From contig NC_069001.1 in assembly GCF_001194135.2 (NCBI RefSeq), positions 37,469,477 through 37,514,028 on the forward strand: a DNA stretch of 44,552 nt, in the 5' to 3' direction. Shown here in pieces: positions 866 to 39,357 of the stretch (positions are counted from its first letter, which is position 1; every line of letters begins with the position of its first letter). The notes under the pieces are model-generated. The model did not search any database. It was given only the letters and a program-made list of their open reading frames with translations, and had not been told where the DNA came from. Source of the DNA: Octopus bimaculoides. Its lineage: Eukaryota. Made by a program: the position numbers and the translations under genes.

Positions 866-894
866 AAATCAAAGTCTTGTTTTTCTCTTTGCAG

Positions 895-1500
895 GTTCTC
901 TATCAACTTAGGATCTTCACTACATGTTTATTCGCTGTGATGATACTGGGGAAAGAAATCAATCGCAGCCAAGGCATAGCGATTGTGATGTTATTCGTCG
1001 GTGTCTGTGTCGTACAGTTAAACCTCGACACAGAACAAACACATAAACATGTTGAGCAACAGACTCAGAATAATTTCCTTGGAGTAGTTGCCATTGTCAT
1101 CTCGGTGTTCCTTTCAGGGTTTGCAGGGGTCTACTTTGAAAAAGTCCTCAAATCAACCTCCAAATCAGTTTGGATACGCAACATACAGTTGGCCAGTTAT
1201 GGCATCTTCCTTGGTTTCATAGGAATAGTCACAAAAGATGGAGCTAAAATACTTGAAAATGGCTTTTTCTTTGGCTACGATAACCTTGTGCTTCTGTCGC
1301 TTTTCATTCAAGCTTTTGCTGGCCTCAGCATTGCGGTTGTGTTCAAATATGCTGACAACGTGCTCAAGTCATTTGCCTCCTCCACGTCCATCATCATTTC
1401 TTGTATTGCTGCTGTCATATTCTTCAAAACACACCTTACACCTGCATTCTACTGTGGTACACTTTTTGTTATATGCTCCCTGTTTCTATACAATAGATAA
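895..1500 (+). CDS. SLC35A: SLC35A-family nucleotide-sugar transporter (UDP-Gal/UDP-GlcNAc/CMP-Sia type), last coding exon; upstream exons are outside the window
   Basis: Acceptor ttttctctttgcag|GTT at 894/895. Translation has family motifs VLYQLRIFTTCLF, SGFAGVYFEKVLK, SVWIRNIQL, GFFFGY, VVFKYADNVLKSFA. Stop TAA at 1498-1500; AATAAA at 2417-2422. The paralog (A1/A2/A3) cannot be resolved by eye. Confidence 0.9.
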   Translation, partial: VLYQLRIFTTCLFAVMILGKEINRSQGIAIVMLFVGVCVVQLNLDTEQTHKHVEQQTQNNFLGVVAIVISVFLSGFAGVYFEKVLKSTSKSVWIRNIQLASYGIFLGFIGIVTKDGAKILENGFFFGYDNLVLLSLFIQAFAGLSIAVVFKYADNVLKSFASSTSIIISCIAAVIFFKTHLTPAFYCGTLFVICSLFLYNR

Positions 1501-6751: not shown

Positions 6752-7145
6752 NNNNNNNNNNNNNNNNNNNNNNNNNNNNNNNNNNNNNNNNNNNNNNNNN
6801 NNNNNNNNNNNNNNNNNNNNNNNNNNNNNNNNNNNNNNNNNNNNNNNNNNNNNNNNNNNNNNNNNNNNNNNNNNNNNNNNNNNNNNNNNNNNNNNNNNNN
6901 NNNNNNNNNNNNNNNNNNNNNNNNNNNNNNNNNNNNNNNNNNNNNNNNNNNNNNNNNNNNNNNNNNNNNNNNNNNNNNNNNNNNNNNNNNNNNNNNNNNN
7001 NNNNNNNNNNNNNNNNNNNNNNNNNNNNNNNNNNNNNNNNNNNNNNNNNNNNNNNNNNNNNNNNNNNNNNNNNNNNNNNNNNNNNNNNNNNNNNNNNNNN
7101 NNNNNNNNNNNNNNNNNNNNNNNNNNNNNNNNNNNNNNNNNNNNN
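6752..7145. other. Assembly gap (N run)
   Basis: Run of N. Confidence 1.
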
Positions 7146-8811: not shown

Positions 8812-8977
8812 CTGTGGGAACACCTGGAGGGACGCCCATAGGAACTGGCATAGGTGGTCTGGCCATAATGGCATTGTTCGGTACAGGTGGGCCTTGGTTC
8901 ATTATCATTGACTGAGAGGAGTTTCCATTGTCTGGTTGTTCTGATGGAGGAGACTTCCGCTGACCAGGGACATCTTG
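8812..8977 (-). CDS. NABP: NABP/SOSS-B coding exon 5 (Pro-rich low-complexity tail)
   Basis: Acceptor tattattgcag|CAA and donor G|gtaagg. 166 nt, phase 0 to 1: QDVPGQRKSPPSEQ...PPMPVPMGVPPGVPT(G). In phase with exon 4. Confidence 0.75.
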
Positions 8978-10062: not shown

Positions 10063-10120
10063 CTTGAAATCTAAATTGGCTTCACTCATGTTTGGTGTCT
10101 CAATAAACTGCATCGTGAAT
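10063..10120 (-). CDS. NABP: NABP/SOSS-B coding exon 4
   Basis: Acceptor ctcctctccag|A and donor AAG|gtac. 58 nt: (E)FTMQFIETPNMSEANLDFK, matching the recalled hSSB1 segment EFCMVYSEVPNFSEPN. Confidence 0.88.
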
Positions 10121-10956: not shown

Positions 10957-11028
10957 TCTCCCATCTTGGTGATTTCACCATTCTTGCCAGTATACAGCGT
11001 CAAACATCCTTTCCAAAGTGAGGAATAA
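10957..11028 (-). CDS. NABP: NABP/SOSS-B coding exon 3
   Basis: Acceptor tttctttatag|T and donor GA|gtaagt. 72 nt: (G)[23 protein letters not shown](E), matching hSSB1 [25 protein letters not shown]. Confidence 0.93.
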
Positions 11029-11872
11029 CTATAAAGAAACAAATGAAATTGATTTATTTTAACTAATCAACAAGGTTTCCACACACACACATTGACACTC
11101 CAGTCTGATGATTGAAGAAAGACGATGGGGACACAAAGTCTGTCTGTCTGTGTATAGGGTAAACATGTGTGCTGAGAGTGCAGCTGTATTCTGTGTCCAA
11201 ATGCAAGAGTCAATGCCTCATCAGGGAGTGAAATAGCTGGAGGGTTTTCAGCCTTTTCCACTGCAACATCAAAGCAGCCTAAAGCCACCTGCTGATGTCA
11301 GTTAAATTCCCATACACAACAGCACACCTTAAAACAGAAAAATGTTAACTGGAAATAGAGCTGTAGTATTACTGTTTATTCTTAAGTTTAACCCTTTTGT
11401 TAGCAAATTTCTGTTGAAATATGCAGACTTTGTTTCAATTAATTGTAAAAATTGAAAATTTAAAAAACTGATGAAGTCCCTTTTAGGCTGTAGTTTGGAA
11501 CATAATAAACATGAAATTTTAATTTAGATAATTCATAATTCTAAAACAAGTTCGTATCACCTGAACAGCATTAGTCTCAGTTGGTTTGGCATGAAAAGTG
11601 TTCAACATGAAAAATTTAATAGAAGCAGCATCTGGTGAGTTGTATTGAAAAGAGAAAGAATATCTAAGACAACACGGCCTCACCAAATATGCCTGAAAAA
11701 TTGGGATGGTCATGGCTGGAATGCAATTGATTAGGGTTGGCTTTAAGCTAAGCAACGACATGGCTGTTTGGTTAAAACGTTTTTATATCAAGTTACTGAG
11801 TTTAATCACATCACAGAGCTCCTGGTGGCTCTGGTCAACACAAACCATGTAAATGTTTCTGGCCATTTTCTA

Positions 11873-12026
11873 TGTACCCTCAGCTCTCATAATCTACGTC
11901 ACAGGCTCCCTCTCAGTGACAGCCACTATCACACACTCACACACACATACATAAATGCACACACACATTTATACAGCAGCTGTTCACCGAGTGAGCCTCA
12001 AGTCAGGTTTCTCATCATTGGGTACA
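11873..12026 (-). ncRNA. Box C/D guide RNA copy 1, SNORD97/SCARNA97(SNORD133)-like; predicted Cm34 of elongator tRNA-Met(CAT)
   Basis: Minus strand: 7-bp terminal stem TGTACCC/GGGTACA, box C ATGATGA (12018-12012), D' CTGA (11916-11913), box D CTGA (11883-11880), guide TAGATTATGAGAG directly before D, and a UG-rich hairpin. It is intronic and on the host strand. Confidence 0.85.
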
Positions 12027-12231
12027 AGAAATACACATTAAGTTACAACTGTACTGACCAAGTGTTTCTTCTAACCCCACAGGTGTATCCACCCAGAATA
12101 CAAGCATTCAACCACATGGTTTCAGGTTCATTCTTACTGCATGGCACCTTGGGCAAGTGTCTCCTACTCTAGCCCCAAATCAACCAAACCATTATGAGTG
12201 AATTTGCTAAATGGAAACTGGAAGTCCACCG

Positions 12232-12268
<37 letters not shown>

Positions 12269-12435
12269 TGTGATTGAGAAGACCCGGCAAGTAAAGTGAG
12301 ATCACAGCCGTAGCCTATAACAGTGTTGCATAACCAGCCCATAACAAAGATATTTTACTAAATTACTCTTCGTTTTCTTCAAAATAATTGAACCAAAGTC
12401 TGTGTATTTAGAAATACAGGAACAAAATGGTCTCA

Positions 12436-12609
12436 CCCTTTAGCATTGAAATTCCTCAGTTAAAAATATTGCTTATTTATTCAAATTGTGTTTAGTTAGT
12501 TATGCATTCAGTAGCTTTGAGATTTCAGTGATGTAAAAGTTTATTTTGAAAATGATATTGTAGGGTAAGTGTGAAAGGCTCGATATGGCTGGTTTAAATA
12601 GCTAAAGGG
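12436..12609. mobile_element. piggyBac-like MITE, decayed copy (CCCTTTAGCA...GCTAAAGGG)
   Basis: Same body as 42306-42528 and the partial copy at ~7822-7990. It sits between guide RNA copies 1 and 2. Confidence 0.7.
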
Positions 12610-12691
12610 TTGAGAGAATGCAACCCTCACTCGGTCTCTCTCTGCTTGTAAAGACACCCCACCATGAGTGTTAAACTATGCAAGTTTTCTG

Positions 12692-12841
12692 TGTACCCTC
12701 AGCTCTCATAATCTGTGTCATTGGTTCCCTCTCAGTGGCAGCCACTATCACACACGCACACGCACAGCCTCACACTCACACACATATACAGCAGCTATCC
12801 ACTGAGTGAACCTCAAGTTCTGTTTCTCATCATTGGGTACA
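12692..12841 (-). ncRNA. Box C/D guide RNA copy 2, SNORD97/SCARNA97(SNORD133)-like
   Basis: Terminal stem TGTACCC/GGGTACA, box C ATGATGA (12833-12827), D' (12735-12732), box D (12702-12699), guide CAGATTATGAGAG, UG-rich hairpin. Confidence 0.87.
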
Positions 12842-13336
12842 TGAAACTACAATATTTGTCCCACCCCCACCGTAAAGCAACATATCTACCCTTCTTACAG
12901 CAATACAAGCCAACCTCGAGGTTGTGAAAATAGCAGCTGCATCTCACCCACAGAAATTATAGTGCCACACAAGCCAGGATGGTCATGGCTGGAACGCCTT
13001 TAATAAGGTCTGGTCAACTTATTTGATCTGCGGCTACAATATGGTCGTGTTGTTAAGAAATTCGATTTGCCATGACAAGAACCACAGATCTGTCACCGTA
13101 AGTTACCTCCCTTGTTTGTTACTCCAAGCCACATGCGTTAACAAAACTAAGTAAATGGAAACTGTGTGGAAGCCTGTCAGATTGCTTGTTCTCGGGTACC
13201 ATTAATGGAGTACATTCTGCTGGAAGACTGCTTGGTTTTCAGATATCAGTCTTTTCTTCCATTAATCCAAGAAGCCAGGCAAAAGACATCATGGCTGCTA
13301 CTCGTCTCCAGTCTAAACTACCATGAGTATATCCAC

Positions 13337-13490
13337 GCATGGCCCAGTGGTTAAGCACTCTTCGTAACCCCATGGTTTCAGGTTCAGCCCTCCTGTGCAG
13401 CATCTCAAGCGTCTTCTACAATAGTCCTAACCCTAATTTAATAACTTGAGTGAATTTGGTAGATGGAAACTGCGTAGAAGCCCGTCATAT
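13337..13490 (+). mobile_element. tRNA-derived SINE-like repeat, family C (other decayed copies at ~5925-6050, ~8325-8450, ~12100-12230 and ~39886-40058 on +; ~3250-3380, ~3800-3920, ~6520-6670 and ~19285-19480 on -)
   Basis: A-box-like GCATGGCCCAGTGGTTAAG, then (g)gttcag.ccc, and the recurrent tail gagtgaatttggtaga(t/c)ggaaactg...agaagccc. Confidence 0.7.
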
Positions 13491-13739
13491 TTATATTGAA
13501 TTTCTTTATCTCTGTCACCATCATCACTTGACCCACTATCGGTTTGTTTACATCCCCTTTACTAGTTTGGCAAAATAGATTAATAGAATAAGGACGGGGC
13601 TTACCAAATGGTTTTATTTTGTGTACTAATTAACGCCATGACGTCTCCTCGAGGAATTTCACACTCCTAACCATAACACCAAGTGATCGTACCTACAGAC
13701 ACTACCCAGGGTGTGGAAGGAGCTTTTTTTTTTTTTCAA

Positions 13740-13895
13740 TGTACCCTCAGCTCTCATAATCTGCGTCACAGGCTCCCTCTCAGTTACAGCCACTATCACA
13801 CACATACCGACATATATAAACGCATACACTCACACATTTATACAGCAGCTGTCCACTGAGTGAGCCTCAAGTCAGTTTTCTCATCATTGGGTACA
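13740..13895 (-). ncRNA. Box C/D guide RNA copy 3, SNORD97/SCARNA97(SNORD133)-like
   Basis: Terminal stem TGTACCC/GGGTACA, box C ATGATGA (13887-13881), D' (13783-13780), C'-like GTGACGC, guide CAGATTATGAGAG, box D (13750-13747), UG-rich hairpin. Confidence 0.87.
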
Positions 13896-15112
13896 AGGAA
13901 TATTCTACAAAAAGTTACAACTGTACCGACGAAAGGAAGTATTTGTTCTACCCCTACAACGGTATCCACTTTTATAGCACGTGCTTACATCCTAACTCTG
14001 CTCAATAAAAAGTACCACAGAACAAGGGAATATCCATGTGGTTACTTCACCTGGTAAAAATAACAGCTAAATCTCTTAAATCATAACTACTATCTTTTAT
14101 ATAAAAAAAAGGGAGAAAAAAAAAGCCAAGAGAGACATGATGGAACACCCGAGTTGCATGGCGATTGACATAATCACTATGTAGTTAGTTAAGTCTTATA
14201 ACTATTTCTTTAAGGGTGGCCATCAACTGATTACACAACCTAACATCTCATTAACAGCAATATATTAATGTAAATATAAAATACAATTTCGTTATTCATT
14301 ATAAATTATATTTCTCCTTCACACCTACCCGTAATAAATAATTATTATTGAGGCTGGCTGGACGTCTTCCTCTTTATTATTAGTTTGTTTCAGTCAGTCC
14401 AGTTTGAAGACCACCCACACATTATATAAGAAATAATTAAGATTGAGTTGAATTAGGTATTTAAGTTGAGACACCAAGTCAGTCCAGTATTGTCCGCACA
14501 GTTCGAAGTAAGGTGAATAAAAAACAAATAACCAACGAGGATACCTGGACATCCTCGTAACTTATTTACTTTATATGGCGATCTATCGGGAGTGTCTCCA
14601 GATTGCCGATATGAGACATCAATCAATTTCTTTTTCAGCCTAGTCGTCTGGGTCTTGTGTGTACACACACACACACACGCAAGAGCCAGGACACCAGTTC
14701 TACACGAGTTCAGTTATAGACTATTTCACGAGAAAGCGCCGCACTTAATACACACACATACGTATTATACACTCACAGGCTTCGAGTTTCTTTCTACTGG
14801 ATTGGGTCACTGGGATCTATATCAGAAGACACTTGCCCAAAGTAGCATGCAACACAACCAAAGTATTAAAAAAAAATGAGGTGAAGGGAGGGAACTCTAG
14901 CGATTTAGGCTGATCCCCTTCCTCCCTCCTAATAATTATAAAGGGGTCAACCACACATTTGAGGAAAGGTTACGATCACTTAGTTCGTGATTGGTACTTA
15001 TTTTATCCAAGGAGAAAACAGTGACAATATTGAATAGACGCAGAAGAATTTTATAGGAAATACAAGAGCCTCTTGATCAAGTGCTGGCTTGAGGTGAGGC
15101 GAAAATACGAAC

Positions 15113-15251
15113 CCTTTCGTCAGCTTACAGATGTCTCCGGTTTGTAGCAAACAGCCTGCTTCGTCCCACACGGACACGTTGACCGAACCGGATTTATCGG
15201 CCACTTTACACGACCGCACATCATGTCCATCTTTGGTTCGGGTAGGTTTAC
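15113..15251 (-). CDS. NABP: NABP/SOSS-B coding exon 2 (OB fold)
   Basis: Acceptor atatttcag|GT and donor GG|gttcgt. 139 nt: (G)[45 protein letters not shown](G), matching hSSB1 [29 protein letters not shown]. Confidence 0.95.
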
Positions 15252-16283: not shown

Positions 16284-16371
16284 CTATTTCCAGAACAATA
16301 AAAGCAACATTAAGACTCTTCAGACCAGGTCTTATGTCTTTGATTTGCATAAATGCAGGATGGCCGTCCAT
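16284..16371 (-). CDS. NABP: NABP/SOSS-B (hSSB1/2-like ssDNA-binding protein) coding exon 1
   Basis: ATG at 16371-16369: MDGHPAFMQIKDIRPGLKSLNVAFIVLEI(G), donor G|gtaggt. Matches hSSB1 [21 protein letters not shown]. Confidence 0.93.
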
Positions 16372-22563: not shown

Positions 22564-23973
22564 TTATTTGACATTTTCCACTTTAATGAATTTGGCAATA
22601 AAAAACCCGATTGTGTCTCTGTTAAAGGCGTCTTTGCTATCACCTGAAACATCTGGTTTAAACCGTTGAACTAACTTCAGATGTTCTGGTGATAGGGAAG
22701 AACCTACTAAACCAGTATCTCCAATATGAGGCTCCTGTGCAGTGAGGACGAGCTGGGGGAAGCTAGCCAAAACCCAGGCCACTTGTTCTTCATTTTCTGC
22801 TAAAGTTATGGTGCAAGTACTGTATACCAAAGTGCCACCGACTTTTAACAGTCCGACGGCTTGTCGAAGTAGTTTACGTTGATACATGGGGAAAGACTTC
22901 AGAAACGATAAACACATTTTGTTACAACACGACGGTCTCTGTCCGAGAGCACTGCACGGAGCATCAAGCAGAATCCGGTCAAAGGTTCCCGGAGGGTACG
23001 GGGGACCTTTGGTTGCTTCAGCTGAACCTTGAAGTGATTTTGTGGAATCAAATGCATAAACCTCAACACATGTTAGACCCCAGCAAGACACTAAAGAGGT
23101 TAGGCGCTCTGCTTTGGGTTTAGTGCGATCTATCGCCACCAGGCGGCCTTTGTTTCTCATCAGTGTGGCAATATGAGTGGTTTTGCCTCCTGGAGCGGCA
23201 CACATATCGAGGACAGTATCGTTTGGCCGAGGGTTCAGCACGTAACTACAAACGGCCGAGGGAAGATTTTGGGCAAATATCAGATCTGAGGTTAAATTGT
23301 CAAGTCTTGGAGCTGAATACAGAGCATTCGTTACCGATACACCAACTCCTGATAATACATGATCGGGCGACGAGTCGCGGAAGATCTGATTGCGACTGAC
23401 CAGGGCAACGCCGTTCCCGAGAAAAATTTTCTCCCCCTTCAAAGGCTGTGTTTGTCCGCGAAGACAAGATCCTTCCATATCGACATACAGCGAAACAATA
23501 TCCCCACGAGTCATATCCAAAGGAGCACCAATGATCCCTTTAACGAACACTTCAGATCCCCTTAGAACCGACATACCACACATGTGGTCAACAACTACTT
23601 GGTCTCCTCGTCTCTCGATCGACTGAACTGGCCCAGCATTAGGTATTATCACAACATCGGGCATGAGAGGGTGGAAGAAAGGCTCGGCCAGTTGCACGGC
23701 CCTTTTTCGGTGGTTGTCTATCAACTGTTCTTTGAGGAGGGCGAGTAGAGGTTCGGGGTCCTGTTGGAGGGTGTTTACACGTACGACAGTAAAGAGTGGC
23801 GGGATTGGAAGAAGAGAGAGTAAATGACAAATTTCTTTCTCACATCTGTCTCTGTCACTTTCAGTAGACTTGGGGAAATTCAGAGATTCTGTCTTCAGGT
23901 ATTCCAGAACTTCACTATTCAATTTAATTTGAGGTGGCAGACAATCATTTGCAGTTTGTTGATTCCTCTCCAT
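22564..23973 (-). CDS. NSUN6: tRNA (cytosine-72-C5)-methyltransferase NSUN6, single-exon CDS, 469 aa
   Basis: Uninterrupted ORF. N-terminal PPLFTVVRVNTL, PUA domain (CGMSVLRG...GDIVSLYVD), motif I DMCAAPGGKTTHIA, motif IV DRILLDAPCS, motif VI YSTCTI, and C-terminal DTIGFFIAKF. Minus-strand AATAAA at 22304-22299. Confidence 0.95.
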   Translation of the reverse strand: MERNQQTANDCLPPQIKLNSEVLEYLKTESLNFPKSTESDRDRCEKEICHLLSLLPIPPLFTVVRVNTLQQDPEPLLALLKEQLIDNHRKRAVQLAEPFFHPLMPDVVIIPNAGPVQSIERRGDQVVVDHMCGMSVLRGSEVFVKGIIGAPLDMTRGDIVSLYVDMEGSCLRGQTQPLKGEKIFLGNGVALVSRNQIFRDSSPDHVLSGVGVSVTNALYSAPRLDNLTSDLIFAQNLPSAVCSYVLNPRPNDTVLDMCAAPGGKTTHIATLMRNKGRLVAIDRTKPKAERLTSLVSCWGLTCVEVYAFDSTKSLQGSAEATKGPPYPPGTFDRILLDAPCSALGQRPSCCNKMCLSFLKSFPMYQRKLLRQAVGLLKVGGTLVYSTCTITLAENEEQVAWVLASFPQLVLTAQEPHIGDTGLVGSSLSPEHLKLVQRFKPDVSGDSKDAFNRDTIGFFIAKFIKVENVK

Positions 23974-24456: not shown

Positions 24457-25028
24457 GGCACTGTCATGCTATTAGCTGTCAGAAGTGAAAGTGCTCACTG
24501 CTAGTGAAGTATCTGTCTGTCTGCCTGCATGCCTGTTGCTGGCCTGTCGATTCTTTGGCTACTGACAGCTAATACCATGACTGGCCGGAGCGAGCTATAT
24601 GTCTGTCTGTCTGTCTATTACTCGAAAGTTCGCGCGTCCTATTATTTTTAAACTTCAAACTTCATTTGTTTTCTATTTTGATAAATTCTCTCTGTTGAAA
24701 ATTATATTTTTATATTTTAAATAATTTGCAATTTCAGGAAATATGTTTTTATATTAAATTTGTGTTTTCTACTCACGACTAGCTAGCGCGGACGCGCGAA
24801 CTTTCGAGTAATAGATAGATAGATAGAGAGAGAGACAGACATATAGCTCGCTCCGGCCAGTCATGGTATTAGCTGTCAGTNNNNNNNNNNNNNNNNNNNN
24901 NNNNNNNNNNNNNNNNNNNNNNGTGGCCAAAGAATCGACAGGCCAGCAACAGGCATGCAGGCAGACAGACAGATACTTCACTAGCAGTGAGCACTTTCAC
25001 TTCTGACAGCTAATAGCATGACAGTGCC
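24457..25028. mobile_element. Foldback-type non-autonomous DNA transposon with ~183-bp TIRs and an 8-bp TSD (MULE-like)
   Basis: 24457-24639 is the reverse complement of 24790-25028, apart from the N gap. The spacer is 150 bp and AT-rich. GGAAAATT is duplicated at 24449-24456 and 25029-25036, and the termini are GGCA...TGCC. Confidence 0.8.
24881..24922. other. Assembly gap (N run) inside the right TIR; true size probably near zero
   Basis: The left arm reads continuously across the equivalent position. Confidence 0.9.
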
Positions 25029-29051: not shown

Positions 29052-29504
29052 CTGGTGGTCGTGGAGGAGGAGAAAATATGAAAAGGAAACAACAGACAAA
29101 TGTAAACAGAATTGAATTACTGCCGCTGCCACCGAACCCCATGCAAATAGTAAGAGCTACTTCTTTACACCACCATGTAGTGATTAGGACTCCTTCTACT
29201 GATGCATATAGTACATACTATCCCCCCTAGATATGCTCCTTTCCTTTACATTATTCTGTAGAGTCCTTCCATATATTCACTGGTCTCTCCTCCACTCCAC
29301 CCACCAACAAACCCTAATTATATCTAGAATTGCCCAACACATCCCCAACCCTCAGATACACACAGTAAAACCTCCTCCCCTACCCACACCCAACAAATTT
29401 CCCACCCTATACAACATCCCATTACATAGAACTCAGCTCCCCCCACCACCACCACACCTGCACATTATTCCCCTGCAATGCACACACCTCTGTCTGATAC
29501 TCAC

Positions 29505-29676
29505 CCTGTCCGAGTTCATAATCTGGAATCTCTGTGAGATGTCTGAAGAGTTGGCAGGTAAACGTGTCCGACCAGACACAAAACGAAGGAACTGGATGCG
29601 TTCTTCGTTGGCAAATGTTTCCAGAACTTTCCAGAACCATGTAACCACAGGACTAGATTCTTCAATACCACGGTAC
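29505..29676 (-). CDS. HERC1: HERC1 exon (HECT)
   Basis: ttag|G ... AGG|gtgagt, 172 nt: YRGIEESSPVVTWFWKVLETFANEERIQFLRFVSGRTRLPANSSDISQRFQIMNSDR. Confidence 0.93.
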
Positions 29677-29724
29677 CTAAGCAAGGACACACAGACAGAT
29701 GAGGTTCAAAATACAAAAAGATCA

Positions 29725-30720
29725 GAAATCTATGATGTCATAGATGTGCGAGTATACAATGTCATAAGTTTAGGATGTCATAGCTATAAAATATGATAAA
29801 AGTGTGATGTCACAGATGGGCTCTGGTGTAATTACACAATGTCATAATTTAGGATATCATAAATATGTGATGTAGCTGTACAATATGATAGAAATATAAT
29901 ATTCTTCTCTACTCTAGACAAAAGGCCCAAAATTTTAGGGGAAGGGGCCAGTTGATTAGATCGGCCCAGTATGCAACTGGTACTTAATTGATCAACTCTG
30001 AAAGTGTGAAAGGCAAAGTTGACCTCGGCGGAATTTGAACTCAAAACGTAAAGACAGATGAAATACTGCTAAGCATTTCGCCCGGTGTGCTAAGGGTTCT
30101 GCCAGCTCACAGCCTTGATAGAAGTATAATATTAGATGTGTCATAATGTAAAATGTACAATGTCATAACTTTTATGCTGTCATAGGTGCGTGATGTAAAA
30201 GAATGTAACAGATGTATAATGGTGCAAATCTGTCATAAGTAAGATATATCGTAGTTGTATGATGCTATAGTAACACAACCTGATGGAAGTATGATGTCAT
30301 AAATGTGATGTGGCACAATCCTACCATGTTATCAATTTATGATGTCATACATTTGTGATGTTATAGCAATGCTGTATGGTAGAAAGGCAATGTCATAAGT
30401 TTATGATGTCACTGACATCTGTTAGTATATATGCATGTAGTCATAAGAGTACAATAGATAGGTGGGTAATGAAGTAAATCTACATCATAGGTTTATGATG
30501 TCATTAGTATATAACGTCACATATGCTTAAAGTCACAGAGGTGTAAATTTACAGACATGTGATGTCATAAGTGTGTAATGGCAAAATATATGTCATAGGT
30601 GTATAATGTCACTGATATATGACATCATAGCCGAGTAATGTTGCAGACATATGATGTCATAACAACCTGTTATAGAGACTGTAACTTCAGGATGTCACAA
30701 AATTATGATGTTGCAGAAGT
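29725..30720. repeat. Decayed satellite-like array of (T/A)GATGTCA(T/C) motifs, interrupted by a SINE
   Basis: Roughly 15-20 motif copies by eye, irregularly spaced. Confidence 0.7.
29904..30115 (-). mobile_element. SINE family B copy with an 18-bp target-site duplication
   Basis: TGATAGAAATATAATATT (29886-29903) versus TGATAGAAGTATAATATT (30116-30133), one mismatch. Confidence 0.8.
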
Positions 30721-31073
30721 CAATCAGAGCCATTATGGCAATGAACTAGTTCGTTAGTCATTTTAACTCAGACTTGATGTTACTACTTGATGGTGGTGGG
30801 GGTGGTGATGTTGTAATGTCAGTCATAACATTGTGATTGTTACTTTTAATTACTACAAGATTATAACTCTCGTTATTAAGAAATGCATATAGTTACTATG
30901 GATCGTGACTGCTGTTACCATGTGATGGCTGTTGCTATGACTAAAAAAGGAATATGCTGTGACTGATGCAGTCATCATGAGATGTTAACTGCTGTAAAGA
31001 AGAGATGGTAACCAGGTAATTACCACAAGAGAGGGACCAAGTGGCGTTAACACCACTAGGTATAGAAACTTAC

Positions 31074-31207
31074 CTCACAATTTTACGCAAGACATCAATA
31101 GACACCTGTTCCATGCCACACACCAATTGTTCAAGATTTCTGGCAGTGAGGAGAGAGAGAAGGGGAACAGGGATGATCCAAGCCATGCCTTCACGTACAG
31201 CAGCAAC
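31074..31207 (-). CDS. HERC1: HERC1 exon (HECT)
   Basis: ttcag|GTT ... AG|gtaag, 134 nt: VAAVREGMAWIIPVPLLSLLTARNLEQLVCGMEQVSIDVLRKIV(R). Confidence 0.95.
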
Positions 31208-32224
31208 CTGAAATAATAGGGTGTAAATATTAGGTTGAAAAATTCCTTTGGAATAACAAAAAGTCAAGGGCTGTCCATGGGACCTGAACCCACATCTCCT
31301 GCAAACATGACAGCCATTCTACCACACACAGACACACATTAAAAGCGCAGAACTTGTGGTGCTTTACAAGACCTTTGACCCTGGTGGAGGGGAGTAAGAA
31401 AGCAGGACTCCTGACTGTCTGCTACAGTAACAATAAGTAGAAACGCATCAACAGATGGATTCACTGTTAAGACACGAACCTGGTCTCCGTGTTTGGGAGA
31501 CAGCAGTGGACCCTGCTAAGGGGAGCCAAAGAAGGACAAAGATTGGGAAGGGAGTTATTTGAGAGAAGTGGTTCTCAAGTATCTTTTACCTACAGTCCCC
31601 TTTGATGCCTGTTTTACTTGGAGGGACCAACATAGACATTTAAGGTTTGAAAAAAAATCCCATTTTAAAATTTGTGGTTTTTACAATTGCTAAGAACAAA
31701 ATGTGAAAATCAGACTAAGTTGGAATTTCATTGATTAATATGTTCTTCTATACACAATCAAACTGGGATATATATATATACATACATATATGTGTGTGTG
31801 TGTGTACGTACATATGTACGTTATATATACATACACACACATACAAACAACTATTCAAAAGCACACACACACACACACACACACAACTAGTCAACTAATG
31901 ATCCAGAGGGAGCTTCTATACAGTCAGCTGATCTGTTTCTGCTAGAAATAACAGCTAAATTTCCCTCAAATCGCACCCCATTATCTTAAAGAACAACAAC
32001 ACATTGGATAATGTAGTCCAAGGTACATTGTGCATGTATAAAAATAGCTTGCTCACAGCTAATATCCTTTTAACAGAAGTCTGCTGGGACTAGGACTGAC
32101 CTGGAGCTAAACAACACCAATGAAAGCTACATTAGATAATGTAGTTCTAGATACACTATGCCTGAATCAAATCCAGTCTGACCCAGGTCTAAACGACAAC
32201 ACAGTCTGTGAGACAAATACTTAC

Positions 32225-32377
32225 CTGTTTATCCATCTCATGTAAGCGATAGAGGGTCGCAGCCTCGGTGTAGGCCTTTCTGTTATGGAATGTTAGAGGA
32301 ATGCTCTTGCCACCTGATACGATAGGAAGCATCTGTCCTGAGGCACTCTGGCCTTCAAAACTGTCCAAAGGGATGTA
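32225..32377 (-). CDS. HERC1: HERC1 exon (HECT)
   Basis: cttccag|TAC ... CAG|gtaagt, 153 nt: YIPLDSFEGQSASGQMLPIVSGGKSIPLTFHNRKAYTEAATLYRLHEMDKQ. Confidence 0.93.
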
Positions 32378-32462
32378 CTGGAAGAGAGGGAGAGAGACAA
32401 ACAGAGAGATGAATATCATAACACAGAATGGCAAACATATATATACACACACACACATATAC

Positions 32463-33082
32463 ACAAGGGGAAGTCAGAAATTATCTGCACTTTCACCATA
32501 ACATATCTTTATTATTGTCACACTGCCTTCTGTGCATGCATGCTTATAATTTTGGTACTATTGTGGTCATGTGATCAATGTTTGTGCCTGATCGTGGTAT
32601 TTTTTTTTTCTGGATTTCCAGCGTAAGCATGGCCACTCCACTAGCAATGGGCACCAAAGAAGAACAAAGACCAGTGATCCAATTTCTCTGCAAAAGGGGT
32701 TTAACAATCAACAGTGCAAGATACAGAGCTTCCCTGGTCAACAAAACTGAAGCCAGCAATTTGCACCAAATGCCAAAGTCTGTTGTCAAAAAAAGTTTTG
32801 TTGTTGTTGCATGACAATGGCCAGATCTTGCCCCTTCTGACCATCATACTTTGGACAGCTCAAAGATGATTTACAAAGTCGTTGATTTCCTATGGATGAA
32901 GATGTGAAGGAAGCGGTGCATAAATGGTTGCATGTAGGGAATACACAAGTTTGTGGACCGTGGGACCAAGTGCACTGAAAAGGAAGAAGACTATACAGAA
33001 AAATGATGGACTTGTTTATCCCCTGCTTTCATGGAAATACATTGAAAAATCAAGAGTGTGTATAATTTTTGAATTTCCCTCG
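32463..33082 (+). mobile_element. Internally deleted, decayed mariner transposon
   Basis: 20-bp TIRs: CAAGGGGAAGTCAGAAATTA versus the reverse complement of the right end, CGAGGGAAATTCAAAAATTA (16/20), with TA at the right end. Transposase remnants MATPLAMGTKEEQRPVIQFLCKRG (~32628) and PDLAPSD..., ...DEDVKEAVHKW..., ...EKEEDYTEK* (~32820-33006), broken by frameshifts. Confidence 0.85.
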
Positions 33083-33559
33083 TATATATACATATATGTT
33101 AAGGCAGTGCTCCAGCATGGCTGCAGTCAAATGACTGAAACATGTGAAAGAATAGATAGGCAAATCAAAAATAAAAGACAGGAAAAAACAACAAAAGTCA
33201 ATTGGGCAAACACTCAGTGAATATATTAGACTGACAATCAGTGAAAGTTCTAAATGGGAAAATAGGAATAGAAATGATTGAGCATGGCTCTTTGTTGTTG
33301 GGAGGAGGAAAAAGTGTTGAGGAGGAACTGACAGTCCATCCCCCACCTCTTTTTTCTGTCACTGTTATAGTAAACCAACACTTGTATTGTATTGTACTAT
33401 CACCTAAACTGTACACCGTATCAATAATGTGCTATCTAATAGTACAGCCCATACTGTATTAAACAACCCACTCTGCACTACAGCCTATACTGTAATGTAA
33501 CACACTATATACCACAGCCTATTCTGTATTAGCAAAATCAACAAACAAAAATGACATAC

Positions 33560-33640
33560 TTCATGAAAATTTGTTTCATTGACACCACTTTCTTGAATGT
33601 TCCGAATCCCAGCCATGGTTTGGACAAAGAAATTGTCTAC
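33560..33640 (-). CDS. HERC1: HERC1 exon (HECT)
   Basis: ttttgcag|GTA ... GAA|gtatgt, 81 nt: VDNFFVQTMAGIRNIQESGVNETNFHE (human as recalled: VDLLYVQTLNSILHIEDSGITEESFHE). Confidence 0.9.
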
Positions 33641-34254
33641 CTGCAAAAGATAATTGGAATATTAGCAAACAGACGTGTGATATAACATTTTACCTGGATT
33701 TTTCACATCATAATCCCTGCCCCACCTGAAATACAAGCTGTGGTTTGGACAAAGAAATTGTCTACCTGCAGAAGATAACAGAGATATAGAGCCCTGTATT
33801 GCCCAAGGACGACCATTGTATCTCCACCTGTCAAGTTTCTTTCCTGGGTTCTTGTTGGGTCAGAGTTTCTCAAGGAAACTCATTATTTGCCCCCATTTGG
33901 TACGTGTACCCCCTTCACACCACTGATGTTGCCCCCTCTCTCTGCTGTTCTTACCCAAAAGAAAGAAAAAAACTGACACAGACTGACACCAGTGTCATCA
34001 CAGACAAACTCCAAACGTAAACAGAGACAGCCAATATCAAATACAAGACATTTTGTCCACAACTTTAATGATTCCACCACTCCATGGCCCTAAAGTGGGA
34101 CTATATTTAATCAAACCCTGGAGGGATGAAGGGCAAATTTGACCTTGGTGGGGTTTGAACTCAGAATGTAAAGAGTCACAAAGCATTTTATGAGACCCTC
34201 TTAACGATTTCACCAGTTCAATGTCTTCAAGAAGTTTCTTCACTCATGTCTTAA

Positions 34255-34500
34255 TGTGCAAGTAGCTGAGTACTCCACAGACAAGAGTAACCTTAATATA
34301 GTTCTCAGGGAGATTCAACATGACACAGAATGTGACAAGACAGGCCCCTTTGAATTACAAGTACAACTCAGTTTTGCCAGCTGAGTGAACTGGAACAATG
34401 TGAAATAAAGTGTCTTGCTCAAGGACACAATGCATCACCAAAGAATTGAACTCATGACCTTATGATTGTGAGCCGAATACCCTAACCACTCAGCCACACA
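34255..34500 (-). mobile_element. tRNA-derived SINE, family A (related copies at ~27408-27620 on + and ~21820-21960)
   Basis: The reverse complement begins GTGGCTGAGTGGTTAG...GAGTTCAATTC and carries the core GTCCTTGAGCAAGACACTTTATTTCAC. Confidence 0.75.
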
Positions 34501-34702
34501 TCTTCGTTTGAAACATAATGAAGGGGCAAATAACAAACACTTTTATTTTCATTTCTAAAAATGAGATTAATCATCAGAAAAATGATAATAATTATTCACT
34601 AAAGATTTGCTTTGGTAAACTTCCAACAGCCCTATCTTCAACCCCTGCCACCTCTGATGTCCCTTAATAAGGGATAGTTAATACGGAAGTAGAGATACTT
34701 AC

Positions 34703-34874
34703 TTCTTCCAGATCACTGATGTCTAGTGCCATGCCAGCCAGAAGTTTCCAGACACAGGGAGCTAAATGGAGGTCCAACGGTTTCTTGGTACGGATGGCAA
34801 CACCAAACAATACCCCAAGGAACTTCAGCATATTCATGTGTTCTTCAGAAGATAATAACGGGTTTAGCAGGAAT
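34703..34874 (-). CDS. HERC1: HERC1 exon (HECT N-lobe)
   Basis: ctctag|A ... GAA|gtaagt, 172 nt: FLLNPLLSSEEHMNMLKFLGVLFGVAIRTKKPLDLHLAPCVWKLLAGMALDISDLEE. Confidence 0.95.
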
Positions 34875-35088
34875 CTAGAGAGAGAGAGATGGGAAAGGTA
34901 CGATTAACACTGAGTATGAGGGTGTTTGTGTGGCTACTGGTCAGATTTTTCCTGTTCATGTCCCTCTCTTATGTCCACTCAATAATACCACAGCCGACAT
35001 ACATACATACATACATACATATAACACACACACACATGCATGCATGCATATTAATACAAACATGGCTATACACAAGGCTAGGTCTTAC

Positions 35089-35165
35089 CTGTCTCTGTTG
35101 TTTCCAGACTCATGCCGTTCATTCGGGGTCAGAATCAGTAATGGTACAAAACCTTTCTCAAGTTC
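35089..35165 (-). CDS. HERC1: HERC1 exon (HECT N-lobe)
   Basis: ttcttccag|GAA ... AG|gtaaga, 77 nt: ELEKGFVPLLILTPNERHESGNNRD(R). Confidence 0.9.
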
Positions 35166-35481
35166 CTGGAAGAATTGGGAAAAAAATAAAGAGACTGAAA
35201 AAGATATACAAAAAAGTCTTCGGGTGTTTATATTTTTTCTTTTATTCTTTTACTTGTTTCTGTGGCCATGCTGGAGCACCACCTTAAAGGGGTTTTTTGT
35301 TGAAGAATTTAACGCCGGGATTTATTCTTTGTGAGCCTGGTACTTATTCTATCGGGCTTTTTTTGCTGAACCACTAAGTTACAGGGATGTAAACATACCA
35401 ACATCAGTTGTCAAGCAATGATGGGGGAACAAACACAGACACACACACTCATAAATATATACATACACACATATATATATA

Positions 35482-35870
35482 GGTGCATGGCATAGCTGGT
35501 TAGAGTGTCGAGCTTATGATCGTGAGGTTGTGAGTTCGATTCCTGGACTAGGTTGCGTGTTGCGTTTTTGAGCAAGACACTTTATTTCACGTTGCTCCAT
35601 TTCATTCAGCTGTAGAAATGAGTTGCAATGTCACTGGTGCCAAGCTGAATCGGTTTTTGCCTCTCCCTTGGATAACATCGGTGGCATGGAGATGGGAGGC
35701 TGGTATGCATGGGCCACTGTTGGTCTTCCATAAACAACCTTGGCTGGACTTGTGCCTCGGAGGGGAACTTTCTAGATACAATCCCATGGTCATTTTGCTC
35801 GAGAACAAAATGCCCTACTGGGACTCGTACTCACAACCTTACAATCGTGGGATGAATACTCAACCCATGA
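35482..35870 (+). mobile_element. tRNA-derived SINE, family A, near full length
   Basis: A box TGGCATAGCTGG, B box GTTCGATTCC (35534-35543), and core TTGAGCAAGACACTTTATTTCACGTTGCTCC. Confidence 0.8.
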
Positions 35871-35959
35871 CTCACACACACACCTGGCACACCTATGTGA
35901 TGGGGTAACACACATAGTTACATACATGTATACACACACACACACTTATATATACATAC

Positions 35960-36125
35960 CTGGCACATCTCGGTGATGGTGTCATCAAACACTCCACCAG
36001 CATCGTCGGCCCCTTCTCCAATTAACTTCACTTTCCAAGCCCTGGCAGGGAGACGCAGGTCTTCAGGTTTCATCTTCACAACCTGCCGAGCCACTTGTAC
36101 GAAGATGGGTTTACACTTCTTACCC
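35960..36125 (-). CDS. HERC1: HERC1 exon (start of HECT)
   Basis: ttctcccag|G ... CAG|gtatgt, 166 nt: GKKCKPIFVQVARQVVKMKPEDLRLPARAWKVKLIGEGADDAGGVFDDTITEMCQ. Confidence 0.95.
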
Positions 36126-36164
36126 CTGGGAGAAGAGAAAATACAGATTAAGGCAAATAGGGAG

Positions 36165-36375
36165 ACAACTCCTCAGGGTAGACACAGCAGGCATTGGGCC
36201 AAGACAGGGAGATGACCCTGGGGAAAAAATACAATAGACATTGGGGTAGGTAGGGAGGTGACCTCAAAGGGAAGACACAGTGGTCATTGGGGCAGTTAGG
36301 GCAATGAACCCCTCACCAGTGGGAGAGACACAGTAGACGTTGGAGTAGTTAAGGCTGTGACTCTGAAAAGCTAAG
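36165..36375. repeat. Degenerate ~48-bp minisatellite, about four units
   Basis: Repeated gacacag(t/c)ag(a/g)c(a/g)ttgg(g)g.ag..agg...tga motif next to a HERC1 acceptor. Confidence 0.6.
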
Positions 36376-37672: not shown

Positions 37673-37802
<130 letters not shown>

Positions 37803-37978
37803 GATAGTTAGACAGACAGATACACATACATATACACACAAACAGATAAATATATAGGTAGACAGACAAACAGATACATAGATAAAGAGATAGACTGATA
37901 TGTAGTAGACATGTAGATACAGACAGATTGATAGATGGGAATGATAGGTAGAGAGGCATAAAAGACAGACATGGTAGG

Positions 37979-38095
<117 letters not shown>

Positions 38096-38450: not shown

Positions 38451-38488
<38 letters not shown>

Positions 38489-39330: not shown

Positions 39331-39357
39331 AAATCAATATGAAATAATCTTACATAC

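What the first reader, a model, noticed from the sequence alone, without database searches (positions are those of the whole stretch)
11873..13895. Three intronic box C/D RNAs that predict 2'-O-methylation of the wobble C34 of elongator tRNA-Met(CAT)
Seen: three ~150-nt copies (11873-12026, 12692-12841, 13740-13895) on the minus strand inside NABP intron 2, the same strand as the host. Each has a perfect 7-bp closing stem TGTACCC...GGGTACA around box C (ATGATGA) and box D (CTGA), plus an internal D' CTGA. Directly before box D sits (C/T)AGATTATGAGAG. Established: the eukaryotic elongator tRNA-Met anticodon arm contains 31-UCUCAUAAUCUG-42, and C/D guides methylate the nucleotide paired to the fifth base upstream of box D. 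In human, SNORD97 and SCARNA97/SNORD133 guide Cm34 of this tRNA, which protects it from angiogenin cleavage (Vitali and Kiss 2019). Inference: copies 2 and 3 pair 12/12 with U31-G42, and copy 1 pairs 11 bp plus a G.U at G42. The D+5 base is the G opposite C34 in all three. The initiator tRNA-Met loop as recalled (GCCCAUAACCC) does not match. Boxes, guide and stems are invariant while the loop and flanks have diverged, as expected under selection. The host is NABP, whereas the human hosts as I recall them are EIF4G2 and LARP4. A triplicated tRNA-wobble guide cluster in a mollusc may be unannotated.
Basis: partly seen in the sequence, partly recalled or inferred. Interest (0 to 1): 0.92.

Follow-up and report, generated by a model that had tools for sequence, protein, structure and literature searches.

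The report
Three octopus SNORD97-like guide RNAs
An intron of an octopus DNA-repair gene carries three conserved copies of a small guide RNA from the known SNORD97 family, which directs methylation of the methionine tRNA anticodon; this is a solid but expected new member of that family, not a new mechanism.

Summary
Three 150-156-nt elements lie on the minus strand in coding intron 2 of the NABP/SOSS-B gene. Each has a perfect 7-bp terminal stem, box C AUGAUGA, box D CUGA, and the antisense element (C/U)AGAUUAUGAGAG. Its fifth base upstream of box D faces C34 of elongator tRNA-Met.

All three copies sit at orthologous positions in Octopus sinensis and O. vulgaris. Argonauta hians has one copy in the same intron. 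Paralogue bodies are 83-90% identical, while their flanks match no better than shuffled sequence. Boxes, stem and guide are essentially invariant, so the elements are under purifying selection.

Rfam gives full-length but sub-threshold matches to SNORD97 and to C. elegans ceN56, which carries the same guide.

Vitali and Kiss (2019) already reported single SNORD97/SCARNA97 homologues in invertebrates and plants.

- The real D' is probably an invariant UUGA, not a CUGA.
- A conserved ~95-nt hairpin lies between D' and C'. In Octopus it is capped by a GU-repeat tract resembling the vertebrate Cajal-body signal.
- Three copies depart from the reported single-homologue pattern.

Expression, the octopus tRNA-Met sequence and genome-wide copy number were not testable here.

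The parts
13740..13895 (-). 5' copy of the SNORD97-like box C/D RNA (156 nt). 5' stem 13889-13895; box C AUGAUGA 13881-13887; D' UUGA 13867-13870; internal hairpin 13771-13866; C' UGUGACGC 13763-13770; guide CAGAUUAUGAGAG 13751-13763; box D CUGA 13747-13750; 3' stem 13740-13746.
   Evidence: Rfam SNORD97 21.3 bits full length. Model R1 181 bits. Orthologues at L001 4796-4952 and L002 4819-4975.
12692..12841 (-). Middle copy (150 nt). 5' stem 12835-12841; box C 12827-12833; D' UUGA 12813-12816; hairpin 12723-12812; C' AAUGACAC 12715-12722; guide CAGAUUAUGAGAG 12703-12715; box D 12699-12702; 3' stem 12692-12698.
   Evidence: Rfam ceN56 24.7 bits full length, E 0.04. R1 180 bits. Orthologues at L001 5835-5991 and L002 5796-5952.
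11873..12026 (-). 3' copy (154 nt). 5' stem 12020-12026; box C 12012-12018; D' UUGA 11998-12001; hairpin 11904-11997; C' UGUGACGU 11896-11903; guide UAGAUUAUGAGAG 11884-11896 (U at position 13); box D 11880-11883; 3' stem 11873-11879.
   Evidence: Rfam SNORD97 19.6 bits full length. R1 195 bits. Orthologues at L001 6801-6957 and L002 6774-6930.
11029..15112 (-). Host intron: coding intron 2 of NABP/SOSS-B, 4,084 nt. The 5' copy starts 1,217 nt after the 5' splice site. The 3' copy ends 844 nt before the 3' splice site.
   Evidence: Exon borders with GT/AG. Orthologous intron in O. sinensis, O. vulgaris and Argonauta.
15113..15251 (-). NABP coding exon 2 (OB-fold core, [23 protein letters not shown]...KLTKG), upstream of the host intron.
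   Evidence: Splice model. 100% identity to P0001.
10957..11028 (-). NABP coding exon 3 ([24 protein letters not shown]), downstream of the host intron.

Best explanation
These are three tandemly duplicated, intron-encoded box C/D 2'-O-methylation guide RNA genes of the SNORD97/SCARNA97 (nematode ceN56) family.

Shown here:
- Each RNA can fold so that its 7-bp terminal stem brings box C (AUGAUGA, preceded by a 3-nt AAU bulge) next to box D (CUGA). That is standard kink-turn geometry.
- An invariant UUGA (D') and an RUGACRY (C') are brought together by a conserved ~95-nt hairpin. This gives the layout C - 10 nt - D' - hairpin - C' - 12-nt guide - D.
- The guide AGAUUAUGAGAG is complementary to U31-U41 of the universally conserved elongator tRNA-Met(CAU) anticodon arm. 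C34 lies opposite the fifth base upstream of box D.

Inferred:
- The RNAs are released from the spliced NABP intron and bound by the 15.5K/Snu13, Nop56, Nop58 and fibrillarin proteins.
- Fibrillarin then methylates the 2'-OH of the wobble cytidine, as was shown experimentally for human SNORD97 and SCARNA97.
- Three units share one 4-kb intron, and none is near the 3' splice site. Releasing all three should therefore need endonucleolytic cuts in the spacers, followed by exonuclease trimming back to the terminal stems.
- The short D' spacer varies among copies and is probably not a guide.
- The benefit in a mollusc is more likely decoding or anticodon-loop stability, or protection from some other anticodon nuclease, than protection from angiogenin.
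For: - Motifs, stem and guide.
- D+5 geometry and invariance of GTCTCATAATCT in tRNA-Met from Arabidopsis to human: Suppl. Fig. S4 of PMC6601510.
- Experimental proof of the mechanism in human cells: PMC6601510.
- Rfam sub-threshold but end-to-end alignments to SNORD97 (21.3 and 19.6 bits) and ceN56 (24.7, 19.3 and 18.1 bits). Similarity extends beyond the guide: a CCC/GGG stem next to the boxes, an A-rich tract after box C, and the C' position. Argonauta gives ceN56 20.7 bits.
- ceN56 levels fall after depletion of C/D snoRNP proteins: PMC2442092.
- Three copies at orthologous positions in O. sinensis and O. vulgaris, and one in the same intron of Argonauta.
- Purifying selection. Paralogue bodies are 83-90% identical against flanks at 47-60%, where shuffled sequence gives 50%. 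Variable alignment columns number 1 of 15 in stem plus box C and 1 of 24 in guide plus D plus stem, against 33 of 38 in the hairpin apex. Orthologue identity is 93-98%, against about 90% for the rest of the intron, a quarter of whose alignment columns are gapped.
- Fold energies have z-scores of -2.4 to -3.5, and the guide is largely unpaired.
- 98.5% of cells pair in the proposed structure, against 30-50% when partners are slid by 1-3 columns.
- An independent homologue with the same layout occurs in environmental contigs.
Against: - There is no expression or RNP evidence of any kind.
No tRNA gene lies in the window or in seven loci.
- Rfam gathering thresholds are not reached. The sub-threshold scores are driven largely by the boxes and by the guide that prompted the hypothesis.
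- Covariation support is weak: one compensatory pair, and the shuffle controls are not exceeded convincingly.
- None of the copies sits at the roughly 70-80-nt distance from the 3' splice site that favours splicing-coupled snoRNA release in vertebrates (my knowledge), so processing efficiency is uncertain.
- Genome-wide copy number is untested.
Confidence: 0.8

Rival explanations
1. The RNAs are genuine tRNA-Met Cm34 guides, but they work as Cajal-body (scaRNA-type) particles rather than nucleolar ones. The GU/UG-repeat tract at the apex of the D'-C' hairpin would act like the vertebrate G.U/U.G wobble-stem localisation signal bound by WDR79/TCAB1. The three paralogues might differ in localisation or expression.
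For: - All nine Octopus copies carry a 32-38-nt apex with a GU-step fraction of 0.43-0.66, the 98th-99.9th percentile of 40-mers in the window.
- That apex can form an uninterrupted (R.U/U.R)n helix of 7-14 pairs with 5-9 wobble pairs.
- PMC4041459 shows that such a helix on the apical hairpin of an intronic C/D RNA is necessary for Cajal-body targeting in human cells, and that (UG)4-6 is sufficient.
- The RNA is long (150-156 nt), as that paper suggests is needed.
- UGAG (CAB-like) motifs occur in the apex of every copy, including Argonauta.
Against: - TG microsatellites are common in this genome: 63 runs of at least 4 units in 44.5 kb (CM hits to TG repeats). The apex is also the most variable part of the RNA, as expected for a neutral microsatellite in a tolerant loop.
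- Argonauta lacks the GU tract (GU-step 0.22, 5-bp helix). The tract is therefore one lineage-specific event inherited by all three paralogues.
- Minimum-free-energy folds do not predict a clean wobble stem.
- The wobble-stem signal is documented only in vertebrates. Drosophila C/D scaRNAs use a different motif, and human SCARNA97 uses a pyrimidine-rich tract.
Confidence: 0.2
2. The RNAs are real box C/D RNAs, but in octopus their main substrate is not tRNA-Met. They would target another RNA with the same complementarity, or have a non-methylation role such as small-RNA production from the long hairpin.
For: - The octopus target was not examined.
- The internal hairpin arms are conserved between Octopus and Argonauta. 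That suggests a constraint beyond guiding.
- The family was classed as 'orphan' for years.
Against: - The 12-nt guide is identical in Octopus, Argonauta, the ceN56 consensus and an environmental homologue, and nearly identical in human SNORD97. This matches the deep invariance of the tRNA-Met anticodon arm.
- The authors' survey of human stable RNAs found tRNA-Met as the possible target, and knockouts confirmed it.
Confidence: 0.08
3. The three elements are non-functional: decaying duplicates, snoRNA retro-copies, or part of a dispersed repeat that happens to carry box-like motifs.
For: - A 14-nt A-run directly follows the 5' copy at 13723-13736, reminiscent of retroposed snoRNA copies.
- SINE-like repeats occupy the spacers.
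- Genome-wide copy number is unknown.
Against: - Flanks of the paralogues are at random-level identity while the bodies are 83-90% identical. The functional motifs are invariant across ten sequences from four species.
- Each copy is retained at its orthologous position in three Octopus genomes, and a single copy lies in the same intron of Argonauta.
- The A-run is short and interrupted in the other two Octopus species.
- No other copy exists in the window or in about 50 kb of other octopod sequence.
Confidence: 0.04

Closest known systems
Human SNORD97 (Rfam RF01291), an intronic box C/D snoRNA in EIF4G2 intron 13
   Same: - Terminal stem with CCC/GGG next to the boxes.
- Box C/D core.
- D-box antisense element AGAUUAUGAGA that places tRNA-Met C34 at D+5.
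- A degenerate C' just 5' of the guide.
- Intronic, in sense orientation; length about 140-155 nt.
   Different: - The host gene is NABP, not EIF4G2.
- Box D is CUGA, whereas the Rfam consensus has AUGA.
- The internal region is a conserved long hairpin, whereas the paper calls the internal regions of the human RNAs pyrimidine-rich and unable to form conventional secondary structure.
- There are three tandem copies in one intron.
- The Rfam score is 20-21 bits against a gathering score of 45.
Human SCARNA97 (SNORD133), a Cajal-body box C/D RNA in LARP4 intron 10
   Same: It has the same guide and target, and it carries an extended internal domain that determines localisation.
   Different: SCARNA97 is 216 nt long. 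Its signal is a 93-nt pyrimidine-rich stretch, and it lacks GU repeats. The octopus RNAs have a structured hairpin capped with GU repeats. According to the authors, the vertebrate SNORD97/SCARNA97 pair arose by an early vertebrate duplication, so the octopus triplication is independent.
C. elegans ceN56 (Rfam RF01643, listed as 'sRNA')
   Same: - The consensus carries ACAGAUUAUGAGAG before the D box.
- It shares the layout C - spacer - D' (CUGA) - internal hairpin - C' (AUGAUAC) - guide - D, with the same C'-to-D spacing as the Octopus copies.
- It is the best Rfam hit for the middle copy and for Argonauta.
- Its level falls after C/D snoRNP depletion.
   Different: ceN56 is shorter (125 nt), has AUGA as box D, and lacks a GU tract. 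Scores of 18-25 bits fall well below its gathering score of 60.
Vertebrate intronic box C/D scaRNAs U90 (SCARNA7) and mgU2-47, which carry the G.U/U.G wobble stem
   Same: They are intron-encoded, unusually long C/D RNAs. Each has a long apical hairpin whose tip is a 20-40-nt GU-dominated repeat.
   Different: Those RNAs guide snRNA methylation. Their signal is known only in vertebrates and has been validated experimentally. Here the resemblance is compositional only, and it is absent in Argonauta.
Archaeal box C/D sRNA that guides Cm34 of elongator tRNA-Met in Haloferax volcanii (Joardar et al. 2011, as cited in PMC6601510)
   Same: It is an RNA-guided 2'-O-methylation of the same nucleotide in the same tRNA.
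   Different: It is an archaeal sRNP acting on the pre-tRNA. I did not examine any sequence relationship.

Membership tests
Box C/D 2'-O-methylation guide RNA (generic) | Box C (RUGAUGA) near the 5' end and box D (CUGA) near the 3' end. | tested here: met
   AUGAUGA lies at RNA positions 9-15, and CUGA lies 7 nt from the 3' end, in all three copies. Argonauta has AUGAUGU.
Box C/D 2'-O-methylation guide RNA (generic) | A terminal stem that juxtaposes boxes C and D in kink-turn geometry. | tested here: met
   A perfect 7-bp stem UGUACCC/GGGUACA is invariant in 10 sequences. A 3-nt bulge (AAU) precedes the GA of box C, and box D abuts the stem. The geometry is read from the sequence, not modelled in 3D.
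Box C/D 2'-O-methylation guide RNA (generic) | An antisense element of at least 10 nt directly upstream of box D, complementary to a stable RNA, with the target opposite the fifth base. | tested here: met
   Positions 2-12 upstream of box D are complementary to U31-U41 (UCUCAUAAUCU) of the elongator tRNA-Met sequences printed in Suppl. Fig. S4 of PMC6601510, with G5 opposite C34. This was tested against the conserved consensus, not against an octopus tRNA gene.
Box C/D 2'-O-methylation guide RNA (generic) | A stable RNA bound by fibrillarin, Nop56, Nop58 and 15.5K. | not testable with these tools
   No expression or RNP data were accessible.
SNORD97/SCARNA97 family, as defined by Vitali and Kiss 2019 | A phylogenetically invariant D-box target-recognition motif for tRNA-Met C34. 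| tested here: met
   AGAUUAUGAGAG is identical in all 10 cephalopod sequences. It matches the SNORD97 and ceN56 Rfam consensus sequences.
SNORD97/SCARNA97 family | Rfam RF01291 gathering score (45 bits). | tested here: not met
   There is no hit at gathering thresholds. Full-length hits score 21.3 and 19.6 bits, E 1.6 and 3.7 over 4,227 families, and the middle copy is not listed for this model. The model is built on vertebrate sequences, so this limits automatic annotation more than it argues against homology.
SNORD97/SCARNA97 family | Located in an EIF4G2 or LARP4 intron (vertebrate hosts). | tested here: not met
   The host is NABP/SOSS-B. The octopus EIF4G2 and LARP4 loci were not examined. 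Hosts of the published invertebrate homologues are not given in the text I could read.
SNORD97/SCARNA97 family | Required for Cm34 of elongator tRNA-Met. | not testable with these tools
   This needs RiboMeth-seq or primer extension on octopus tRNA, with and without the RNAs.
SNORD97/SCARNA97 family | A single homologue per invertebrate genome (the reported pattern). | tested here: not met
   Three Octopus genomes each hold three tandem copies, and Argonauta holds one. The published pattern is described.
ceN56 (Rfam RF01643) | Gathering score (60 bits). | tested here: not met
   Scores are 24.7, 19.3 and 18.1 bits for the window copies and 20.7 bits for Argonauta, all full length.
Vertebrate intronic C/D scaRNAs with a G.U/U.G wobble stem | A GU/UG-dominated 20-40-nt repeat that forms the terminal stem-loop of a long apical hairpin. 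| tested here: inconclusive
   Composition and possible helices fit in the nine Octopus copies. However, minimum-free-energy folds do not show a clean wobble stem, Argonauta lacks the tract, and TG microsatellites are common in the window.
Vertebrate intronic C/D scaRNAs with a G.U/U.G wobble stem | WDR79/TCAB1 binding and Cajal-body accumulation. | not testable with these tools
   This needs FISH and immunoprecipitation.

The most novel reading that the evidence does not exclude
Octopus has independently turned its tRNA-Met Cm34 guide into a small multigene family. Its members carry a GU/UG wobble-stem Cajal-body signal on a conserved D'-C' hairpin. This would be the first such signal outside vertebrates, and a convergent parallel to the vertebrate SNORD97/SCARNA97 split between nucleolus and Cajal body. 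The three paralogues might be subfunctionalised by localisation or tissue.
Probability: 0.12. Interest if true: 0.6.

Novelty: new member of a known kind. Interest (0 to 1): 0.35.

Why it matters
This extends RNA-guided methylation of the tRNA-Met wobble base to molluscs. Until now the guide was experimentally proven only in human cells and predicted in insects, tunicates and plants.

It also shows that Rfam's curated thresholds miss these genes, so standard genome annotation will probably overlook them. The covariance model built here, or the guide-plus-box pattern, would recover them.

The shared layout (C - D' - hairpin - C' - guide - D) links octopod RNAs with nematode ceN56 and with an environmental metazoan sequence. 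That suggests ceN56 is the nematode SNORD97 orthologue.

The tandem triplication and the GU-capped hairpin offer a modest natural experiment on snoRNA dosage, processing of several snoRNAs from one intron, and localisation signals. None of this changes what is known about the mechanism.

Tried and rejected
- Rfam at gathering thresholds gave nothing on the window or on five other loci. Only the permissive mode was informative.
- tRNA search of the window and of seven loci found no tRNA gene, so the species' own target could not be checked.
One CUGA lies too close to box C and is missing from the middle copy; the other is base-paired inside the hairpin.
- The small hairpin that RNAalifold drew inside the guide (columns 162-177) was dropped as implausible for an antisense element.
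- NABP as an ancestral host was tested and not supported. The NABP genes of Haliotis, Crassostrea, Mizuhopecten and Lingula have no guide match, even with 2 mismatches, and no CM hit.
- The metagenome pattern scan returned 8 contigs. Three are one real homologue (L008, L009, L015). The other five lack a terminal stem and were treated as chance.
- The many weak CM hits cover model positions ~50-110 only. They are TG microsatellites matching the hairpin apex.
- An exact look-up of the window's 469-aa methyltransferase ORF, meant to identify the source assembly, found nothing on record. The window is about 10% diverged in this intron from O. sinensis and O. vulgaris, so it probably comes from another Octopus species (inference).
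- Pfam did not recognise the spliced NABP fragment at E<0.001. Its identity rests on homologue names and on the tblastn to human NABP2.
- I did not search the octopus EIF4G2 or LARP4 loci. A human query would probably fill the 120-row hit list with vertebrate proteins, and the search is costly.
Full report
**1. What is in the sequence**

Read on the minus strand, the region holds three elements:
- 13740-13895 (156 nt)
- 12692-12841 (150 nt)
- 11873-12026 (154 nt)

Each begins UGUACCC-A-AUGAUGA and ends (C/U)AGAUUAUGAGAG-CUGA-GGGUACA.

- The 16-mer AGATTATGAGAGCTGA occurs three times, against 0.04 expected by chance.
- A repeat search finds only these three copies, and similarity stops about 7 nt beyond each end.
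- A three-way alignment shows the stem, boxes and guide invariant and the centre variable.
- A covariance model built later from ten cephalopod sequences finds no other copy in the 44.5-kb window. Its remaining weak hits are TG microsatellites matching the variable centre.

**2. Host gene**

- exon 1: 16284-16371
- exon 2: 15113-15251
- exon 3: 10957-11028
- exon 4: 10063-10120
- exon 5: 8812-8977

The spliced product is 100% identical, over 100% of the 175-aa query, to an annotated Octopus protein. Its homologues in many animals are named SOSS complex subunit B1/B2, which is NABP.

The three elements lie in coding intron 2 (11029-15112) on the host strand. The 5' copy starts 1,217 nt from the 5' splice site. 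The 3' copy ends 844 nt from the 3' splice site.

**3. Anatomy**

- The 7-bp terminal stem, a 3-nt bulge (AAU), the GA of box C and a box D that abuts the stem together give textbook kink-turn geometry.
- Single-sequence folds are more stable than shuffles (z = -3.35, -2.41, -3.50). All show a long internal hairpin, with the guide mostly unpaired.
- On the ten-sequence alignment, 98.5% of cells pair in the structure I propose, against 30-50% when partners are slid by 1-3 columns. Only one pair shows compensatory change, so covariation support is weak.

One CUGA lies only 5 nt after box C and is CAGAAC in the middle copy. The other is paired inside the hairpin.

An invariant UUGA at RNA positions 26-29 sits directly 5' of the hairpin base (GGYUC). 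The 3' strand of that base (GRRCC) is followed by three nucleotides and then GAC(R)Y. This mirrors the terminal C/D arrangement and is the expected position of a C'/D' pair.

The layout is therefore C - 10 nt - D' - ~95-nt hairpin - C' - 12-nt guide - D. The 10-nt D' spacer differs among copies, so I take it not to be a guide.

**4. Target**

Counting from box D, the guide bases are G1 A2 G3 A4 G5 U6 A7 U8 U9 A10 G11 A12 (C/U)13.

The elongator tRNA-Met genes printed in Suppl. Fig. S4 of Vitali and Kiss (PMC6601510) all contain GTCTCATAATCT, from Arabidopsis to human. Position 42 is G in vertebrates and Ciona, and T in insects.

- Guide positions 2-12 pair with U31-U41, and G5 faces C34.
- Position 13 adds a C-G pair (5' and middle copies) or a U.G pair (3' copy) if the octopus tRNA has G42.
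- No tRNA gene is present in the window or in seven fetched loci. The species' own tRNA was therefore not checked.

**5. Relatives and selection**

Using the host protein, I fetched the NABP loci of several species:
- Octopus sinensis (L001)
- O. vulgaris (L002)
- Argonauta hians (L003)

Findings:
- Both Octopus genomes have three copies in the same intron. Argonauta has one copy in the orthologous intron.
- In the alignment, the 5', middle and 3' copies each group with their positional counterparts across the three Octopus genomes. The triplication therefore predates their divergence.
- Paralogue bodies are 83-90% identical, while their 100-nt and 200-nt flanks score 47-60%. Shuffled sequences score 50%.
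- Variable columns number 1 of 15 in stem plus box C, 1 of 24 in guide plus box D plus stem, and 33 of 38 in the hairpin apex.
- Between species, the RNAs are 93-98% identical with almost no gaps. The rest of the intron is about 90% identical, and about a quarter of its alignment columns are gapped.
- The NABP genes of Haliotis, Crassostrea, Mizuhopecten and Lingula carry nothing similar. On present evidence the NABP location is an octopod feature.

**6. Comparison with known families**

Rfam at curated thresholds reports nothing. In permissive mode the only C/D families that align end to end are:
- SNORD97 (RF01291): 21.3 and 19.6 bits, against a gathering score of 45.
- C. elegans ceN56 (RF01643): 24.7, 19.3 and 18.1 bits, against a gathering score of 60. 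Argonauta gives ceN56 20.7 bits.

These E-values are unimpressive for a blind scan, and much of the score comes from the guide that prompted the hypothesis. The alignments do share other features: the CCC/GGG part of the stem, the A-rich tract after box C and the C' position. The ceN56 consensus has the same guide and the same D'-hairpin-C' layout. ceN56 expression falls when C/D snoRNP proteins are depleted (PMC2442092).

A pattern scan of metagenome contigs recovered one more homologue (L008, L009, L015). It has the same layout and scores 32-34 bits, full length, with the cephalopod model.

**7. What the literature already says**

Vitali and Kiss (PMC6601510) established the following:
- Human SNORD97 (EIF4G2 intron 13) and SCARNA97/SNORD133 (LARP4 intron 10) jointly direct Cm34 of elongator tRNA-Met.
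- Loss of both abolishes the modification.
- Cm34 protects the tRNA from angiogenin.

The same paper states that a single SNORD97/SCARNA97 candidate exists in insects, Ciona and flowering plants, with an invariant guide. A later review repeats this (PMC7038934). Searches for snoRNA work in cephalopods found nothing specific.

The octopus genes are thus a new member of a known, ancient family, not a new kind of system. Angiogenin belongs to the vertebrate RNase A family (my knowledge). The protective role would therefore have to involve a different nuclease in a mollusc, or else the benefit lies in decoding.

**8. What is mildly unusual**

(a) Three tandem copies occur where invertebrates were reported to have one.

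(b) All three share a single 4-kb intron, far from the 3' splice site. Releasing all three should require endonucleolytic cuts in the spacers (inference).

(c) The internal hairpin arms are conserved between Octopus and Argonauta although the surrounding intron cannot be aligned. This points to a constraint beyond boxes and guide.

(d) The apex of that hairpin is a GU/UG-repeat tract in all nine Octopus copies.
- Its GU-step fraction is 0.43-0.66, the 98th-99.9th percentile of the window.
- It can form 7-14 consecutive R.U/U.R pairs.
- Marnef et al. (PMC4041459) showed that such a tract at the tip of the apical hairpin targets vertebrate intronic C/D RNAs to Cajal bodies, and that (UG)4-6 suffices.

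Against a functional reading of (d):
- TG microsatellites are frequent here.
- The apex is the fastest-changing part of the RNA.
- Argonauta lacks the tract.
- Energy-based folds do not predict a clean wobble stem.
- Human SCARNA97 uses a different signal.

I give this reading about 0.2 as a localisation hypothesis, and 0.12 for the fuller convergent-evolution story.

**9. Verdict**

- Best explanation, confidence 0.8: functional SNORD97-family box C/D guides for Cm34 of elongator tRNA-Met, triplicated in the Octopus lineage and hosted in NABP intron 2.
- Novelty: new member of a known kind.
- Interest: about 0.35. It is a useful annotation and a tidy evolutionary case, with a speculative localisation angle.
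- Untested: expression, RNP association, the octopus tRNA sequence, genome-wide copy number, and the EIF4G2 and LARP4 loci.

Noticed in passing
Rfam RF01643 alignment to window 12694-12839 (-): The consensus of C. elegans 'sRNA' ceN56 carries ACAGAUUAUGAGAG before an AUGA box D and has the same D'-hairpin-C' layout. It looks like the nematode orthologue of SNORD97, yet Rfam keeps it as a separate, unclassified family. The nematode is not among the species named in the text of the 2019 paper that I could read.
   Followed up: partly
L015 564-711 (-), L008 51-198 (-), L009 61-208 (+): Environmental contigs from JGI metagenomes carry a SNORD97-like C/D RNA: GCCC-GAUGAUGU ... ACAGAUUAUGAGAG-CUGA-GGGC. 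It has the same architecture and lies downstream of exon-like ORFs on the same strand. By eye those ORFs resemble a deoxynucleoside-kinase/NDUFA10-type protein (L015 2049-2594, 1519-1704, 1179-1493). The source organism is unknown and the protein identity was not tested.
   Followed up: partly
window 13723-13736 (minus strand, directly 3' of the 5' copy): A run of 14 A follows the 5' copy three bases after its terminal stem. In O. sinensis and O. vulgaris the run is shorter and interrupted. All Octopus copies share GAAAA a few bases after the stem. It could be a remnant of the duplication unit, a microsatellite, or a trace of retroposition.
   Followed up: partly
window 13472, 12220, 40045, 7487, 4030 (-) and 3803, 19330 (+): A dispersed SINE-like repeat (core CAGTTTCCATCTACCAAATTCACTCA, up to 6 mismatches allowed) occurs seven times in the window on both strands. 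Two copies lie in the spacers between the snoRNA genes, which probably explains the different copy spacing among Octopus species.
   Followed up: partly
window 22564-23973 (-): An uninterrupted 469-aa ORF carries an RsmB/F-type (NOL1/NOP2/Sun) RNA cytosine-C5 methyltransferase domain (Pfam PF01189, E 4e-40). It seems to be an intronless gene in an otherwise intron-rich region. An exact-sequence look-up found no record of this product.
   Followed up: partly
window 877-1500 (+): A large exon encodes the C-terminal two thirds of a nucleotide-sugar transporter (Pfam PF04142, E 3e-70).
   Followed up: partly
window ~29400-44300 (-): Several exon-sized ORFs encode RCC1 repeats (e.g. 40449-40799, 41890-42114, 39334-39576, 44003-44284) and part of a HECT domain (29433-29690). 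This fits a HERC-type ubiquitin ligase gene spanning the right third of the window.
   Followed up: partly
window 6752-7145, 24881-24922, 36937-37672: These are assembly gaps (runs of N). The window is also very rich in TG, TA and TC microsatellites. The source is probably an Octopus species other than O. sinensis or O. vulgaris, since intron identity to them is about 90% against 97% between those two.
   Followed up: no
window 11884-11896 versus L002 6908-6923: Guide position 13 is U in the 3' copy of the window species and of O. sinensis, but C in O. vulgaris. O. vulgaris also changes the preceding C' base (UGUGAUGC). The only variable column in the guide block is therefore the one facing tRNA position 42.
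   Followed up: no
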